Shown: positions 5,816-26,215 of the stretch, piece by piece
Layout: every line of letters begins with the position of its first letter
How positions within the stretch are numbered: position 1 is the stretch's first letter
Made by a program: the position numbers and the translations under genes
Assembly (NCBI RefSeq): GCF_006345805.1
Contig: NC_043003.1
Location: 64,728,001-64,792,000, forward strand
Length of the DNA stretch: 64,000 nt
Reading direction: 5' to 3'
From: Octopus sinensis
Lineage: Eukaryota
The notes under the pieces: model-generated
The model's database searches: none
What the model was told of the DNA's origin: nothing
Seen by the model: only the letters and a program-made list of their open reading frames with translations

Positions 5816-7034
5816 ATGTCATTCGTCTGTCTGTCTACGGTGAAATTCGACACCCAGTATTTGATTCGGAGCTGGCACGTGAGCAAAGCTATTCTAGTCT
5901 TCAGCTACCATCTAAACCAAAAGACGTTAGCGCTGGATATCTAACACAAATTGACGCATCAAGTTTTCGGAGAGCTCCCCGACTGCAAGATCTAGCTCTG
6001 GTAGGAAATAGAATCCGGTTCCTCAGTCCACATTTGTTTCAAAACATTACCGAATTAATCAATCTCAACTTACGAAAGAACAATATCCAATATTTATCCA
6101 GTGCAGCATTACAAGGTCTTCCAAATTTACAAGAAATTCGTCTTTCTAATAACAAAATTGCTTATATCAATGGGAGATTCTTTCAATGGACACGAAAAAT
6201 AGTCGAAATCTATCTGGACACTAATCGAATAAGTAGAATATATAGCGGTTTATTTAATTCTTTGCGGTTTTTGGAAGTGGTTGATCTGTCGCGGAATAAT
6301 CTAAATGATATGCCAAGGAACGTGTTTTACCAAAACAGTAAATTGAAGGTCATTCGTTTGGATAACAATCGTTTAAAATTATTGCGGCCTGAATGGTTCC
6401 GAAACTTGCAGAATCTAGAGGTCCTTTCATTGAAGGGTAATCGTTTTTGGGTTCTACCAAATGATATGATTTCGAGACCGAATGCCTTACGTGAGCTCTA
6501 CTTGTCTCATAATTTCTTATCGAATTTGAACAAAACTTTCTTTGATAACTTAGAGCACTTGGAAACGATTGATCTTTACAGTAATAAGATTACCAAATTA
6601 CCATTCCGCTGTTTTGATCGCCAGTATAAACTGAAGAACCTGAATCTAGCAGACAATTTCATATCGAATTTAGACTCAATGCCGTTTTATAGAGTATCCA
6701 CGCTTGAAGAACTCAATCTCTCTTTAAACTGGCTCGAAAATATCTCAAAAGGTCTGTTTTCTTCGACCATCTCTCTGCTGAGGATTAATCTCAGCTTTAA
6801 CAAGTTGCCTGCGATTTACAACGATAGTTTTTTAGGCTTAACTCACATGAGGGAACTGAATTTAGCCAATAATTCTATAAGACATCTTGATGCCAGGGCC
6901 TTCAGCGTAGGAAAGTTGAACCAGCTTTCTCAACTGACATGGTTGAATCTCCAGTTTAACCAAATCGGAGAGATTTTACCTCAAGTCTTCCATGAGTCAC
7001 CACATTTGAAATTTCTCAACATCGGACACAACAG
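5816..7034 (+). CDS. LRR-pseudoprotease gene, first identified exon (about 15 LRRs)
   Basis: Polypyrimidine tract plus AG acceptor at 5814-5815. The frame is open from 5815 (DVIRLSVYGE...), upstream of the listed ORF start. It contains regular 24-aa LxxLxLxxNxL repeats, and the donor is AG|GTTAGT at 7035 (phase 2). Confidence 0.92.
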
Positions 7035-9386
7035 GTTAGTGACTATTTAGAGTAGTGCTTCGCAAGCTTTTCCTGTCAACGTCCCAAAACTTTATTGGCT
7101 CCCAAACGACCATTTCCACATTTTCATGTCTATTCTTTTCAAAACTGTTGCTTAGTCTAGCAGTGTGCATGACTTGACAGATAATAACTCTTTCTACTAT
7201 AGGTACAAGGTCTGAAATTTTGTGGAAGAGGACTAATGGACCCCGAAAGGATAAAAAACAAAGTGGACCTGGAGGAAGTTTGAACTCGGAACGTAAAAAT
7301 CAGGAAAATGCCGTTAAGCATTTTGTCTACAGTGCTAACGATTCCGTCAGCTCGCCACTTTTTTTTCAAGAGAAAACAATTATATTATTAAGTTCAAAAC
7401 TGAATCAATTTTTTTAAATATATAATTTCTATTGTTTACTTAATCAAACAATTATCTTTACAATAAGTGAATCATACAACATAATCCTAAAATAACTCAG
7501 TAAGAAATAATATTTCGAAACTTCGTGAGTTTTCTATTCCGCAAATGAGCTAAAAGTGTCGGAACATCTACAGATTTTCTTAGGTTTCAAATATATTCAT
7601 TCTTATTTGTCCTTGCTCTAAATTCCTTTTACGTTGTTGAAACCAAAGTCAAAAAAAGGAAATATTTAGCAGCCGGAAGATTGCAATTCTAATTTACATT
7701 CGAATCAGTCTTTCTTCCGGTATAAACAATGTTTTTTAACACTTCGTAGTCAATCGAATGTAATTTGTTGAGTTAGGTGAAGGTGGTGTACAGGGTGATA
7801 ACTTATAGATGAAGTAGAAACCATTGTTAGAGAAGAAACAAAGATAGTGAACGGACATTATTCAGTAACGGATAATTATTGGAAGAATGGTGAATTGGAA
7901 AAGGTTGTCGGTCAAGCAATATAAAAATCAATATCACCATCGTATTTCGACGTGGTTGAATATCCAACCCCAACCAGTCGGGGTGAATAGTATGATGTAC
8001 TATTCATCCTTTCAATCGGTGAATGCAAAAACGTGTCTCGCGAGGCCGCTGTTCGGGAGATTTTCCTGAGTCACCATCTCACCTTATAACTTCCTTTCCT
8101 GGATTCTGTGGTGCATATATTCCCTTTCCCCACCGGACTGGATGGCCGACCATTGTCGGATTACTCATTTTTGATAGCTGAGAGGACTGGAGCAATCTGA
8201 AATGTAGTGTTTTGCTCAAAAACACAACGCATCACCCAGTCCAGGAATCGAAACCGCAACCTTGCAATCATGAGTCGAACACCCTAACCACTAAGCCACA
8301 ATAACAATTTTGGTAAAGACGGTAGAATGTTTGACCAATTAACACCAATGTCGATTTGGAGAAGATGTTAGCAATGTTATTTTAAAAATATATCGTGTTA
8401 TTGAAGCCACAATAAATGGTAGCATGACTGTACATGGCAGTAAGCTGGTAACGTTGTTAGCGTGTAGAACAAAATGATTAGCGGCATTTCTTCCAGCTCT
8501 TTACGTTCTGAGTTCAAATCCTGTCGAGGTCAACTTTATCTTTCATCGCTTTGGGGTTGACAGAATATAGTACTAACCAAGTACTGGGGTCGAGGCAATC
8601 GATTTGTCCTCTTTGATTCGAAAATGGCTGACATTGAACCCTGCAACAGACTGGCATCATAACCACCAGTAATGTTATGACTTTGATCACTTATATGCCA
8701 CAGAAACCGAGCAACCGTCCTTCTAAGCCTTCGAGCTTAGAAAAAAGTAGCTGTGTGTATGAGTGTGTGCGTGTATGCGTGTGTGTACATGTGCGTGAAA
8801 CAGTGAGTATATGTGTGTGTGTACATAGGTGTGTGTGAACCGTGTGAGACAGTGCTTTGTCTAATACTCATGTCTGTGGAAACGGTCTTCTGCATTCAGA
8901 GAATTTTGAGATACTTAATGGTTCCTGTAAAATGTTTACCTGATTCTACTGCGAGGGCAAGAGTCTTTTACAATATTCAAGGGTGACCAATGGTTGGCTG
9001 AAACTATGTGAAAACTCGTCGTATGTGTGTGTGTATATGTGTGTGTGTTTGTGTGTGTGTCTTTTTGTTTGTGTTTGTCCTTTTCTCTCCACTTGACAAA
9101 CGCGTTGGTTTTAGTCTCCGTGGCTTAGTGGCTCGGCAAAGGAATTCAATAGAATAAGTGCCAGATTTAGAAGAAAAAAAGGAAAATGTCTGGGGTCAAT
9201 TTGTTCAACGAAACCGATCAATGCGGTGCTCCAGCATAGCTGCCATCCAATGACTGAAATAGATACAAAATATTACTGTCTCACTTCGCTCTCAACATTA
9301 ATGAATTTCTCATAGCATTTTGTCATTTTGCTCTCTGAGTATAAATCCTCTCGAGGTCGTGTCCGGGCAGATTCAATCGTCTAAAT

Positions 9387-9667
9387 CAGTGGTTCCTAAA
9401 GTGGGCAGTACTTCCCCCTTGGTGCACAGATCCAGGGGGCGTTGATGAAAAGTGGATGATAATGGGGTGGCCATAATGGGGTGACAGATGTAAACGTAAA
9501 TATATTAATAATTTAATTAGGTTTAAGTTGTATTTGTGAAATAGAATTGTTTTGAATTTTCTGCAGAGAGTGGTCTATATTTGTGGTGGAGGTGAGGGTG
9601 AGGGGGCACTAGGAATGTGGTCTGGGTGTCAAGGGGGCGGCAACCTGAAAAATTTTGGGAACCACTG
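9387..9667. mobile_element. hAT (Charlie-like) MITE 1
   Basis: TIRs CAGTGGTTCCTAAA and TTTGGGAACCACTG, with 8 bp flanks GTCTAAAT and GTCTACAT. A fragment of the same family lies at about 52880-52977. Confidence 0.8.
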
Positions 9668-25100: not shown

Positions 25101-25533
25101 GTGTGTGTGTGCATGTTTGTGTGTGCGCGCGCGTGTGTGTATGTCACGATGAATCTCCCCGAGAATTACGTAAGAGGTATACGTGTCTGTGGAGTGCTCA
25201 GCCACTTGTACCTAATTTCACGATCAGGCAGTTCCGTCGATCAGGTCAACTGGAACCCTCGTCATCATAACCGACTAAGTGCCACGACTGGGTCAACTTC
25301 GGCCGAAACTTATCTAAGTAATCTAAGCATTTTCCCACTTTTGACAGCATCGTATCGTGTATGATTCGTAAACTGTTATCTTTTCCATTCTATACTTTCA
25401 CAGTTCCTAACTTTCATGTAATAATTATTTGTACGCTTTTGTTTACGACAGAATTATTTAATTAACTGATTAGCTACTTCCTTATTTTATCTCTTATATA
25501 TTTACATAAGTATTTATTGATTTATCTTTACAG

Positions 25534-26215
25534 GAAATTCAAGGCTGAGCTGTTCCACTTCCATGCGACGGTGATCGATTCCTTTGGCCAAATTGTTTGT
25601 AATGGACACTCATTATCGCCCACTTGGATCCTTACAACACTCTCTTGCATTCGCTCATTAATGACCACATCTAGTGACAACACGGGCAGTTTCCCTATAA
25701 ATACACAAGTCAGAATTGGGCACGGTCACCCGAGAGAGATAAACAAGGTTATTGTCCAACCAGGCAATGGTTCACTGGCTTTACTTCGGGTTCACAGTAA
25801 TTCGTCTTTCCAGGATGAACATCGTATTGGTGACGTGTGTCTGATGAATAAAACCGACTTCTCTATCGTTACAAAAACACTCAAGACCGGAGCTTTTACT
25901 GCGAATGTCGACGGTCGTAAGTCAGGCTCGAAACTGAAAGCCGTCCGTGCCAAATACAGCCCTGCATTTTGTTCAAGACAACCGAATAAAATATGTGTCC
26001 GTATGCAGAATCGAACCCGTCAGAAAAGGGGTTTACTTACCTTAGGATCACCATTATATTTTGGGAGTTCATCTAATTGGCGTTTAGTAGGAATCGGATC
26101 AGGTTTTAAATCAACGTCAAACACAGAAATATCCCCGACGCCATCTTTGAACATAGTCGATTTCTATCCTTTATGGAATATTTTAGAATGGTTAAATAGA
26201 ACTATTTCGACTTGA
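25534..26215 (+). CDS. LRR-pseudoprotease gene, terminal exon: trypsin-like serine protease homolog lacking catalytic residues
   Basis: Acceptor tttatctttacAG at 25532-25533, whose phase 2 matches 22190. Motifs CNGHSLSPTWILTTLSC (cf. CGGSLI...WVLTAAHC), SLALLRV (cf. DIALLKL), DVCL, FCSRQPNKIC and LTLGSPL...WRLVGIGS (cf. GDSGGPL...W.LVGIVS). Stop TGA at 26213-26215. Confidence 0.85.

What the first reader, a model, noticed from the sequence alone, without database searches (positions are those of the whole stretch)
5816..26215. Gene fusing about 22 LRRs to a catalytically dead trypsin-fold domain (LRR-pseudoprotease)
Seen: four exons splice with canonical GT-AG and matching phases (2, 0, 2) into one frame of about 969 aa. 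Both the LRR unit and the LRRCT cap are reconstituted exactly across junctions (HNR|IRAL; C..P..VTGLK|MMSLNPQDFKC). No transmembrane, TIR or Ig domain is visible. Established: LRR arrays are ligand-binding scaffolds, and serine protease homologs act as non-catalytic regulators in invertebrate immune and developmental protease cascades. Inference: a secreted receptor/adaptor coupling ligand recognition to a protease cascade, or a protease decoy. I do not recall this architecture as a characterised mollusc protein, but could not search to confirm novelty.
Basis: partly seen in the sequence, partly recalled or inferred. Interest (0 to 1): 0.85.

Follow-up and report, generated by a model that had tools for sequence, protein, structure and literature searches.

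The report
Octopus secreted LRR–dead protease fusion
This is a real octopus gene for a secreted protein that joins a long leucine-rich-repeat binding horseshoe to a trypsin-shaped domain that has lost all its catalytic residues; the same fusion is conserved across molluscs, has never been studied, and is misnamed in databases as a Toll-like receptor.

Summary
The four exons splice GT-AG with phases 2, 0, 2 into one 968-codon frame. That frame is 100% identical to residues 168-1135 of Octopus sinensis RefSeq XP_029638823.1, which is named 'toll-like receptor 6'.

The gene is cut at its 5' end by the window. About 167 residues (signal peptide and N-terminal Cys cap) lie upstream, and the ATG at 5816 is out of frame.

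The protein has 21 regular LRRs plus a terminal one, an LRRCT cap, a roughly 100-residue disordered linker and a C-terminal domain. It has no TM, TIR or Ig domain.

Pfam misses the C-terminal domain in octopus, but it is a chymotrypsin fold:
- AlphaFold2 model: pLDDT 79, pTM 0.84.
- Foldseek to thrombin, factor Xa and plasmin: E about 1e-10.
- Family profile against chymotrypsinogen: E = 2e-8.

His57, Asp102 and Ser195 are replaced by Ser, Ser and Leu. No family member examined keeps His57.

Orthologues with the same architecture occur in cuttlefish (full-length mRNA contigs), at least eight bivalve genera and a chiton. The dead domain is as conserved as the LRRs (dN/dS 0.15).

It is not a TLR. 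It is most likely a non-catalytic, two-module extracellular binder. An immune-cascade role is untested. I found no literature on it.

The parts
5816..7034 (+). Internal coding exon. It starts after an AG acceptor (phase-1 intron) and ends at a phase-2 GT donor. It encodes the first ~406 residues present in the window: the end of the N-terminal cap (VIRLSVYGE), a low-confidence loop, and LRRs 1-15 (first regular LRR at 5983).
   Evidence: identical to XP_029638823.1 residues 168 onward
7035..12385 (+). Intron of 5351 nt, GT..AG, phase 2. It is full of SINE-like repeats and microsatellites.
12386..13004 (+). Coding exon. It encodes LRRs 16-22 and the first part of the LRRCT cap (NPLDCDC starts at 12882). 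It ends in phase 0.
13005..21801 (+). Intron of 8797 nt, GT..AG, phase 0.
21802..22190 (+). Coding exon. It encodes the end of LRRCT (last Cys at 21832-21834), a ~100-residue Ser/Asn/Lys-rich disordered linker, the conserved pre-domain Cys (22144-22146) and the basic stretch NRKGFR. It ends in phase 2. Reading through the donor gives CGG TAA, which would produce an LRR-only product.
   Evidence: linker pLDDT below 50; linker dN/dS 0.40
22191..25533 (+). Intron of 3343 nt, GT..AG, phase 2. It separates the LRR and linker part from the pseudoprotease exon.
   Evidence: splice sites conserved in O. bimaculoides
25534..26215 (+). Last coding exon: the whole chymotrypsin-fold pseudoprotease domain plus the stop codon (26213-26215). 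His57 equivalent is Ser (25643-25645), Asp102 equivalent is Ser (25772-25774), Ser195 equivalent is Leu (26042-26044). The invariant GSP (26045-26053) aligns to Gly196-Gly197-Pro198. Cysteines kept: Cys42/58, Cys122 (25838-25840), Cys168/182.
   Evidence: dN/dS 0.145 against O. bimaculoides
26319..26351 (+). Two AATAAA hexamers about 105-135 nt after the stop codon. They are likely polyadenylation signals of the full-length mRNA.
   Evidence: Inference only, because the hexamer is common in this AT-rich sequence.

Best explanation
The interval holds the last four coding exons of the Octopus sinensis gene whose product is RefSeq XP_029638823.1 (1135 aa).

The protein is secreted and heavily N-glycosylatable. 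In order it contains:
- a signal peptide;
- a Cys-capped N-terminus with a disordered insert;
- a solenoid of about 22 LRRs closed by an LRRCT;
- a disordered linker of about 100 residues;
- a chymotrypsin-fold domain.

The chymotrypsin-fold domain has lost His57, Asp102, Ser195, Gly193, Asp194 and the activation N-terminus, so it cannot be a protease or a zymogen. A conserved cysteine just before the domain and the conserved Cys122 probably tether it to the linker, as in two-chain mosaic proteases.

The protein belongs to an old, architecturally uniform mollusc family in which the triad loss is ancestral and the dead domain is kept under purifying selection.

I infer that it acts as a non-catalytic, two-module extracellular binder. 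The LRR horseshoe holds one partner and the remodelled protease domain holds a second. This is the way the dead protease domains of HGF, haptoglobin or insect serine protease homologues act as binding modules. Because the family shows no expansion and both modules evolve equally slowly, the partners are more likely conserved endogenous molecules than variable microbial ones.

Shown here: gene structure, domain content, fold, triad loss, conservation. Inferred: secretion (from the signal peptide), the disulfide tether, the bridging function, and the nature of the partners.

The confidence of 0.6 is for the whole statement including the bridging mechanism. The structural description alone I put at about 0.9.
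For: Gene model:
- The spliced frame is 100% identical to O. sinensis XP_029638823.1 residues 168-1135, 99.9% to O. vulgaris CAI9725852.1 and 96.7% to O. bimaculoides XP_014777416.1.

Fold:
- AlphaFold2 model of the last 245 residues: pLDDT 79.4, pTM 0.84.
- Foldseek matches thrombin, factor Xa, uPA, plasmin and haptoglobin at E 5e-11 to 6e-10 with TM 0.6-0.67.
- The family profile matches chymotrypsinogen A at E = 2e-8 over the whole domain.
- Pfam Trypsin passes its gathering score in the orthologues P0002, P0005 and P0008.

Dead site:
- H57 to S, D102 to S, S195 to L, D194 to T and G193 to L in octopus.
- None of 17 diverse members has His57.

Secretion:
- The N-terminal signal-type hydrophobic segment is the only such segment (highest hydropathy elsewhere 1.38, against a usual cut-off of about 1.6).
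- There are 17 N-glycosylation sequons.

Modules:
- In the full-length model the LRR solenoid has pLDDT above 90, the linker (residues 791-891) is below 50, and the dead protease domain is 65-85.

Family:
- The same architecture, 946-1135 aa, occurs in Sepia, Mya, Mytilus (five species), Pecten, Mizuhopecten, Pinctada, Tegillarca, Mactra and Mercenaria. The domain also occurs in a chiton model.
- Cuttlefish contigs of 3.9-4.7 kb carry the whole 1128-codon ORF uninterrupted, so one mRNA joins both modules.

Selection:
- Dead-domain dN/dS is 0.145 between O. sinensis and O. bimaculoides.
- Identity of the dead domain versus the LRR part is 98.0 vs 97.4% (between octopuses) and 54.9 vs 53.7% (octopus to cuttlefish).
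Against: - No expression, localisation, binding or processing data exist for any member.
- Splicing of exon 3 to exon 4 in octopus itself rests on gene models, not on reads that I could inspect.
- The newer O. bimaculoides annotation splits the gene into a 909-aa LRR protein and a 184-aa fragment.
- Pfam does not detect the trypsin domain in the octopus protein itself.
- The disulfide tether and the disordered state of the linker are predictions.
- 'No expansion' is judged from clustered databases, not from a full genome census.
- The dN/dS value rests on only 18 substitutions.
Confidence: 0.6

Rival explanations
1. One reading: an immune pattern-recognition adaptor or decoy. The LRR array would bind microbial ligands. 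The dead protease domain would recruit, scaffold or sequester components of a haemolymph protease or complement-like cascade. This would be a one-polypeptide version of the mosquito pairing of the LRR proteins LRIM1/APL1C with the non-catalytic SPCLIP1.
For: The architecture is compatible: secreted, LRR plus dead S1 domain. In Anopheles, LRR proteins and non-catalytic serine protease homologues act together in TEP1 recruitment (PMC3764210, found). Insect serine protease homologues are cascade cofactors (PMC6901238).
Against: There is no clip domain. No lineage-specific expansion or fast evolution of the LRR part was seen. Identity is 97% between octopus species, and the architecture is the same from chiton to octopus. 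No infection-response data were found. The analogy is by domain type only, not by homology of the partners.
Confidence: 0.2
2. In octopus the LRR part and the trypsin-like exon are two separate genes or products. The fused 1135-aa model would then be an annotation artefact. The real products would be a 909-aa LRR-only protein (read-through of the exon 3 donor gives a stop at once) and an independent small protein from exon 4.
For: The current O. bimaculoides annotation has XP_014777417.2 (909 aa, ending in KGFR) and LOC128248396 (184 aa, starting at an internal Met of exon 4) as separate genes. Logan contigs from another octopod carry intron sequence directly upstream of exon 4 (P0125/P0126).
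Against: - Exon 3 donor and exon 4 acceptor are in matching phase and conserved between species.
- A product starting at the internal Met would lack a signal peptide, the first beta-strands and Cys42.
- The cysteine that should pair with Cys122 lies in exon 3 and is conserved family-wide.
- Cuttlefish and bivalve transcripts join both parts in one ORF.
- The O. sinensis and O. vulgaris annotations are fused.
- The O. bimaculoides assembly has a 10-N gap followed by a 100% identical duplicate of the exon 3 end inside intron 3. This probably broke that gene model.
- An LRR-only isoform may still coexist with the full-length form.
Confidence: 0.08
3. It is what the databases call it: a Toll-like receptor 6, or an orthologue of IGFALS, chaoptin or artichoke, with the function of those proteins.
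For: Source names. The LRR part resembles artichoke, chaoptin, IGFALS and Toll-6/Tollo at 25-30% identity, with E values 1e-77 and weaker.
Against: There is no TM and no TIR, so it is not a TLR. There is no C-terminal GPI-type hydrophobic signal, so it is not chaoptin-like in anchoring. All the named relatives lack a protease-fold domain, and the similarity is generic LRR similarity. Different orthologues receive four different names, which shows that the names are automatic transfers.
Confidence: 0.03
4. The domain is still an enzyme that uses a non-canonical active site, as claimed for some 'pseudoenzymes' whose catalytic residues have migrated.
For: An invariant Gly-Ser-Pro sits two residues after the Ser195 position, and several residues (His29 equivalent, Thr141) are invariant among nine members. 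Pseudoenzymes with relocated catalytic residues are discussed in PMC10211241 (listed).
Against: His57 is absent in all 17 members. Asp102 is absent in about half. The oxyanion-hole Gly193 and Asp194 are gone. The Cys191-Cys220 disulfide that shapes the S1 pocket is missing. The invariant Ser aligns to Gly197, not to Ser195.
Confidence: 0.04

Closest known systems
Vertebrate mosaic pseudoproteases: hepatocyte growth factor / macrophage-stimulating protein, haptoglobin, protein Z
   Same: All are secreted. All have N-terminal binding modules followed by a C-terminal chymotrypsin-fold domain that has lost triad residues and serves as a binding surface. In all, the domain is tethered to the preceding region through Cys122. 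Haptoglobin is among the Foldseek matches (9fnm_B, E = 4.8e-10).
   Different: Their N-terminal modules are kringle, CCP or Gla-EGF domains, not an LRR solenoid. They keep a zymogen-type cleavage site, and HGF needs cleavage to signal. Here the IVGG-type N-terminus and Asp194 are gone. No orthology is implied.
Arthropod serine protease homologues (clip-domain SPHs such as SPCLIP1, CLIPA8/28, PPAF-II, masquerade)
   Same: They are non-catalytic S1-fold domains in secreted invertebrate proteins. They act as cofactors and scaffolds rather than enzymes (PMC3764210, PMC6901238).
   Different: They carry N-terminal clip domains and usually lack only Ser195. They are activated by cleavage. The octopus protein has no clip domain, lacks all three triad residues and carries 22 LRRs.
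LRR-only extracellular proteins: IGFALS / Drosophila convoluted, artichoke, chaoptin
   Same: They have about 20 or more typical 24-residue LRRs with Cys caps. They are secreted or surface proteins. They are the best non-mollusc sequence matches to the LRR part.
   Different: None has a protease-fold domain. Chaoptin is GPI-anchored. Identity is only 25-30% and is generic to LRRs.
Toll-like receptors (the RefSeq name of this gene)
   Same: A long LRR ectodomain with an LRRCT.
   Different: No transmembrane helix and no TIR domain. A dead protease domain sits where the TM and TIR would be.
Anopheles LRIM1/APL1C LRR complex together with SPCLIP1
   Same: An LRR binding module and a non-catalytic protease homologue cooperate in one extracellular pathway (PMC3764210).
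   Different: There they are separate polypeptides with coiled-coil and clip domains. Here both modules sit in one chain. No homology beyond the domain class has been shown.

Membership tests
Peptidase S1 (chymotrypsin) fold | Two-beta-barrel chymotrypsin fold, recognisable by structure or profile comparison. | tested here: met
   AlphaFold2 model with pLDDT 79.4 and pTM 0.84. Foldseek to thrombin, factor Xa, uPA and plasmin at E about 1e-10, probability 1.00, TM 0.6-0.67. Family profile against chymotrypsinogen A at E = 2e-8 over positions 30-231.
Peptidase S1 (chymotrypsin) fold | Pfam PF00089 Trypsin at or above the gathering score (20.6 bits). | tested here: inconclusive
   No hit at E below 1 for the window protein or for P0001. 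The orthologues pass: P0005 at 28.7 bits, P0008 at 22.8 bits (profile positions 10-220 of 220) and P0002 at 22.4 bits.
Active S1 serine peptidase | Catalytic triad His57, Asp102 and Ser195. | tested here: not met
   The residues are Ser, Ser and Leu in octopus. His57 is absent in all 17 members aligned.
Active S1 serine peptidase | Zymogen activation: a new Ile16 N-terminus forming a salt bridge to Asp194, and the oxyanion-hole Gly193. | tested here: not met
   Asp194 is Thr and Gly193 is Leu. There is no IVGG-like N-terminus, and the pre-domain segment is modelled as a helix.
Serine protease homologue (non-peptidase S1 homologue) | S1 fold with at least one triad residue replaced, kept under selection. 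| tested here: met
   Fold. Triad loss. dN/dS of 0.145 and conservation equal to the LRR part.
Clip-domain serine protease homologue (arthropod cSPH) | One or more N-terminal clip domains. | tested here: not met
   No clip-domain family among the Pfam hits at E up to 1.
Toll-like receptor | A single transmembrane helix after the LRR ectodomain. | tested here: not met
   Apart from the signal peptide, the highest 19-residue hydropathy in P0121 is 1.38, and that segment lies inside an LRR.
Toll-like receptor | A cytoplasmic TIR domain. | tested here: not met
   No PF01582 or PF13676 hit. The C-terminus is the S1-fold domain.
Extracellular LRR proteins with Cys caps (typical LRR class) | A tandem LxxLxLxxNxL array with an LRRCT four-Cys cap. 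| tested here: met
   LRR_8 at E = 9e-76. There are 21 regular units at 24-residue spacing plus a terminal one. The cap reads NPLDCDC...C...C.
IGFALS | An LRR-only secreted protein of about 600 aa that forms a ternary complex with IGF and IGFBP. | tested here: not met
   The architecture differs by an extra ~345 residues of linker and S1-fold domain. Complex formation cannot be tested with these tools.
Chaoptin | An LRR-only protein with a C-terminal GPI-anchor signal. | tested here: not met
   The C-terminus (...LEWLNRTIST) is hydrophilic and there is no terminal hydrophobic segment.
Two-chain mosaic (pseudo)proteases such as HGF and haptoglobin | A disulfide from a pre-domain cysteine to Cys122 that tethers the S1 domain. 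| tested here: inconclusive
   Both cysteines are conserved wherever the sequence covers them. The bond itself was not verified, because no model coordinates were available.

The most novel reading that the evidence does not exclude
Molluscs, and possibly other lophotrochozoans, have an ancient dedicated extracellular factor in which a 22-LRR recognition solenoid is permanently fused to a dead protease domain. In this reading it is either of two things:
- a single-chain counterpart of the LRR / serine-protease-homologue pairs that control complement-like and melanisation cascades in arthropods, making it a founding component of a mollusc humoral cascade;
- a new class of HGF-like ligand whose dead protease domain engages a cell-surface receptor.
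Probability: 0.15. Interest if true: 0.7.

Novelty: new variant of a known kind. Interest (0 to 1): 0.45.

Why it matters
Dead proteases and LRR proteins are each well known as extracellular binding modules. A conserved fusion of the two has not been described in anything I could find.

The fusion is kept from chitons and bivalves to octopus, and its catalytic site was lost before those lineages split. It has therefore served a non-enzymatic purpose for a very long time. It is a clean candidate for functional work in mollusc immunity, development or neurobiology.

There is also a practical point. The gene is named 'toll-like receptor 6', 'chaoptin-like', 'artichoke-like' or 'IGFALS' in different species. 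Those names will mislead TLR censuses and expression studies in octopus and in aquaculture bivalves. Pfam misses the domain in cephalopods, so ordinary domain annotation does not show the architecture there.

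Tried and rejected
- Translating from the ATG at 5816 gives stops within 43 codons. The reading frame is +2 of that exon.
- I looked for the N-terminal 167 residues in the window by tblastn with relaxed settings. The best E value was 1.6, so they are not present.
- Pfam on the last exon alone gave nothing. phmmer against PDB gave only a half-domain match to plasminogen at E = 3.7e-4. 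The case needed orthologues, a family profile and a structure model.
- The search for homologous proteins with exons 3 and 4 found nothing. With the 17-member domain profile it found only three proteins. The full-length query nevertheless retrieved P0001 at 100% coverage. The misses are therefore a blind spot of the word index, not absence.
- Literature searches by architecture, species, accession numbers and phrases returned nothing relevant. One call failed on term length. The Mnemiopsis genome paper and the mollusc TLR review do not mention this protein.
- The taxa of two further full-length members (P0166, P0197) and several short ones could not be established, because their clusters carry no names.
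- I looked for a polyadenylation signal just after exon 3 to support an LRR-only isoform. The first AATAAA on the + strand is 2.2 kb downstream, so this is uninformative.
- tRNA and Rfam scans of the window gave no hits.
- No second gene is evident in 26.3-64 kb.

Full report
**Observation.**
I read the four intervals and their flanks. I joined them in a script.
- Each exon is preceded by AG, and the first three are followed by GT.
- The joined 2909 nt give a single open frame of 968 codons plus TGA. The frame starts at the third base of the first exon.
- The ATG at 5816-5818 is in another frame, which stops after 42 codons.
- 5816 is therefore the first base after an acceptor of a phase-1 intron, not a start codon.
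- A motif count finds 21 regular LxxLxLxxNxL units at exact 24-residue spacing. There is also the terminal 'SVVLSDNPL' unit and a four-cysteine LRRCT that is completed across the second junction.

**Identity of the gene.**
I searched with the 968-residue translation and looked up the cluster of the best hit.
- It is 100% identical to residues 168-1135 of Octopus sinensis XP_029638823.1, named 'toll-like receptor 6'.
- It is 99.9% identical to O. vulgaris CAI9725852.1.
- It is 96.7% identical to O. bimaculoides XP_014777416.1 (A0A0L8GXS8), named 'chaoptin-like'.
- The first 167 residues are not encoded in the window. They comprise the signal peptide, a CPGQCRC cap, a long insert and the motif 'DLMCVGIRDLPTSLPTD'. 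The gene is cut at its 5' end.

**The C-terminal domain.**
Pfam finds only LRR families in the octopus protein and nothing in the last exon.
- phmmer against PDB gives a modest match of the first half to the plasminogen protease domain. E is 3.7e-4, and FGQIVCNGHSLSPTWILTTLSC aligns to [22 protein letters not shown].
- Orthologues settle the question. Pfam Trypsin passes its gathering score in the cuttlefish protein P0002 (22.4 bits). It also passes in the bivalve proteins P0005 (28.7 bits) and P0008 (22.8 bits, nearly the whole profile).
- A profile of nine C-terminal domains (A1) matches chymotrypsinogen A at E = 2e-8 over the entire domain.
- An AlphaFold2 model built on that alignment has pLDDT 79.4 and pTM 0.84.
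- By Foldseek the model matches thrombin, factor Xa, uPA, activated protein C, factor XI, plasmin and haptoglobin. E ranges from 5e-11 to 6e-10 and TM from 0.6 to 0.67.
- The trypsin fold is therefore established.

**The active site.**
The profile alignment to chymotrypsin places octopus Ser at His57, Ser at Asp102 and Leu at Ser195.
- The family-invariant Gly-Ser-Pro aligns to Gly196-Gly197-Pro198.
- Cys191, Gly193 and Asp194 are also replaced.
- There is no IVGG-type N-terminus.
- Across 17 diverse members none has His57. Asp102 survives in about half. Only one has a serine at position 195.
- The loss of catalysis therefore predates the divergence of the groups sampled.
- Conserved cysteines are Cys42/58 (in most members), Cys168/182, Cys122 and a cysteine about 25 residues before the domain (LQCTVP, in exon 3).
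- By analogy with chymotrypsinogen Cys1-Cys122 and the mosaic proteases, that last pair probably tethers the domain to the linker. This is an inference, because I had no model coordinates to check it.

**The whole protein.**
- In P0121 the only segment with transmembrane-like hydropathy is the N-terminal signal peptide.
- The C-terminus is hydrophilic.
- There are 17 N-glycosylation sequons.
- A full-length AlphaFold2 model of the 97%-identical O. bimaculoides protein shows an LRR solenoid with pLDDT above 90.
- The N-terminal 147 residues and the linker (residues 791-891) fall below 50. The protease-fold domain is at 65-85, and the overall pTM is 0.56.
- This describes two folded modules on a flexible tether.

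**The family.**
An exhaustive profile search of 1.84 billion representative proteins gave 281 hits at E up to 1e-3 and 18 at E up to 1e-30.
- The strong hits of 946-1001 residues carry the domain at the C-terminus behind an LRR array.
- The named clusters are:
  - Mya arenaria;
  - five Mytilus species;
  - Pecten and Mizuhopecten;
  - Pinctada.
- Tegillarca, Mactra and Mercenaria and Sepia pharaonis add to these.
- A 1619-residue chiton model (Liolophura) contains the domain as well.
- The source names differ widely: IGFALS, ALS-like, artichoke-like, chaoptin-like, TLR6. This shows they are automatic transfers from the LRR part.
- Cuttlefish Logan contigs of 3.9-4.7 kb carry the complete 1128-codon ORF without interruption. 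One identical protein is seen on 79 contigs.
- The Sepia genome annotation breaks the gene at the same exon boundary as in octopus. These contigs are therefore spliced mRNAs that join both modules.

**Selection.**
I fetched the O. bimaculoides locus (L002) and aligned exons 3 and 4 without gaps.
- Splice sites and the stop codon are conserved.
- dN/dS is 0.145 for the dead domain (12 synonymous and 6 non-synonymous changes). It is 0.40 for the linker.
- Identity in the dead domain equals or exceeds that of the LRR part:

| Comparison | Dead domain | LRR part |
|---|---|---|
| O. sinensis to O. bimaculoides | 98.0% | 97.4% |
| Octopus to cuttlefish | 54.9% | 53.7% |
| Octopus to bivalves | 23-29% | 32-33% |

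.
- The linker varies in length by about 70 residues between octopus and the other members.

**A caveat and its likely cause.**
The newer O. bimaculoides annotation has two genes: a 909-residue LRR protein that ends at KGFR, and a separate 184-residue 'uncharacterized protein' that starts at an internal Met of exon 4.
- Reading through the exon 3 donor does give an immediate stop (CGG TAA), so an LRR-only isoform is possible.
- However, that assembly has a 10-N gap in intron 3, followed by a 100% identical copy of the last ~147 nt of exon 3 plus the donor. This is an assembly artefact that would disturb model building.
- A protein starting at the internal Met would have no signal peptide and would lack the first strands and Cys42.
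- I therefore rate the 'two genes' reading at about 0.08. Only junction-spanning reads from octopus can close the question.

**Mechanism.**
- What is shown: a secreted-type mosaic of an LRR solenoid and an ancestral, selectively maintained pseudoprotease.
- What follows from established knowledge: LRR solenoids bind ligands on their concave face. Dead S1 domains act as binding modules, for example:
  - the HGF beta-chain with Met;
  - haptoglobin with haemoglobin;
  - protein Z with its serpin;
  - insect serine protease homologues as cascade cofactors.
- My inference is a non-catalytic, two-site extracellular binder.
It has a real parallel in Anopheles, where LRIM1/APL1C and SPCLIP1 cooperate (PMC3764210).
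- Nothing here supports that version specifically. The uniform, unexpanded and slowly evolving family looks more like a protein with conserved endogenous partners.
- I put the general mechanism at about 0.6, and the structural description at about 0.9. Within the general mechanism, the immune version is about 0.2.

**Novelty.**
- Searches by accession, species, architecture and phrase found no paper on this gene or this domain combination. Two candidate papers do not mention it.
- The sequences themselves are public predicted models.
- I therefore class the finding as a new variant of a known kind: a mosaic serine protease homologue with an LRR partner. It is uncharacterised and misnamed, not categorically new.

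**The rest of the window.**
From 26.3 to 64 kb I found only microsatellite and SINE-derived ORFs. There were no tRNA genes and no Rfam matches.

Noticed in passing
window 5816-5818 and upstream 1-5815: The ATG at the start of the reported interval is out of frame. The exon begins after an AG acceptor of a phase-1 intron. The ~167 N-terminal residues of the protein (signal peptide, CPGQCRC cap, insert) are not encoded anywhere in the window.
   Followed up: yes
window, e.g. 11669-11830, 14346-14495, 16430-16591, 41925-42086, 59082-59234, 60604-60765, 60835-60996 (family 1); 143-283, 3188-3325, 4072-4212, 17991-18125, 36292-36429, 48792-48923 (family 2): Two families of short interspersed (SINE-like) repeats occur on both strands, with about 20 and about 24 copies in 64 kb. 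Many lie in the introns of this gene. They produce recurring spurious ORFs (…[17 protein letters not shown]… and …PRKDEKQSRPRRNLNSE…).
   Followed up: partly
window 834-1700, 14540-15337, 30537-30954, 32591-33162, 39792-40577, 42490-42984, 47559-48056: Long microsatellite and low-complexity arrays give ORFs of 100-260 codons in several frames on both strands. None looks like a gene.
   Followed up: partly
window 26300-64000: No convincing second gene lies downstream of the LRR-pseudoprotease gene. There are no tRNA genes and no Rfam match at gathering score in the whole window.
   Followed up: partly
L002 (O. bimaculoides CM046607.1) 4120-4279 and 4588-4747: The last ~147 nt of exon 3 plus the donor are present twice, 100% identical. 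The second copy comes directly after a run of 10 N. This looks like an assembly artefact inside intron 3. It probably explains why the newer annotation splits the gene into XP_014777417.2 and LOC128248396.
   Followed up: partly
window 22189-22196 (exon 3 donor): Read-through of the donor gives CGG TAA, which would produce an LRR-only product ending in KGFR. Such an isoform is annotated in O. bimaculoides. O. vulgaris has a second model (1042 aa) that leaves the last exon early. Alternative products lacking an intact dead domain may exist.
   Followed up: partly
bivalve orthologues P0004-P0008, P0148, P0155, P0156 (C-termini): Bivalve members carry a C-terminal extension of about 35 residues with two conserved cysteines (E-x-D/N-x-K-C … C-x-x-L-x-L). 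Cephalopod members lack it. Cephalopods instead have a much longer N-terminal insert, and octopus has a longer linker.
   Followed up: no
(tool behaviour): The word-indexed protein search missed the 97%-identical O. bimaculoides protein when queried with exons 3 and 4 or with the domain profile. The full-length query found it. 'No homologues' from that tool was a false negative here.
   Followed up: yes
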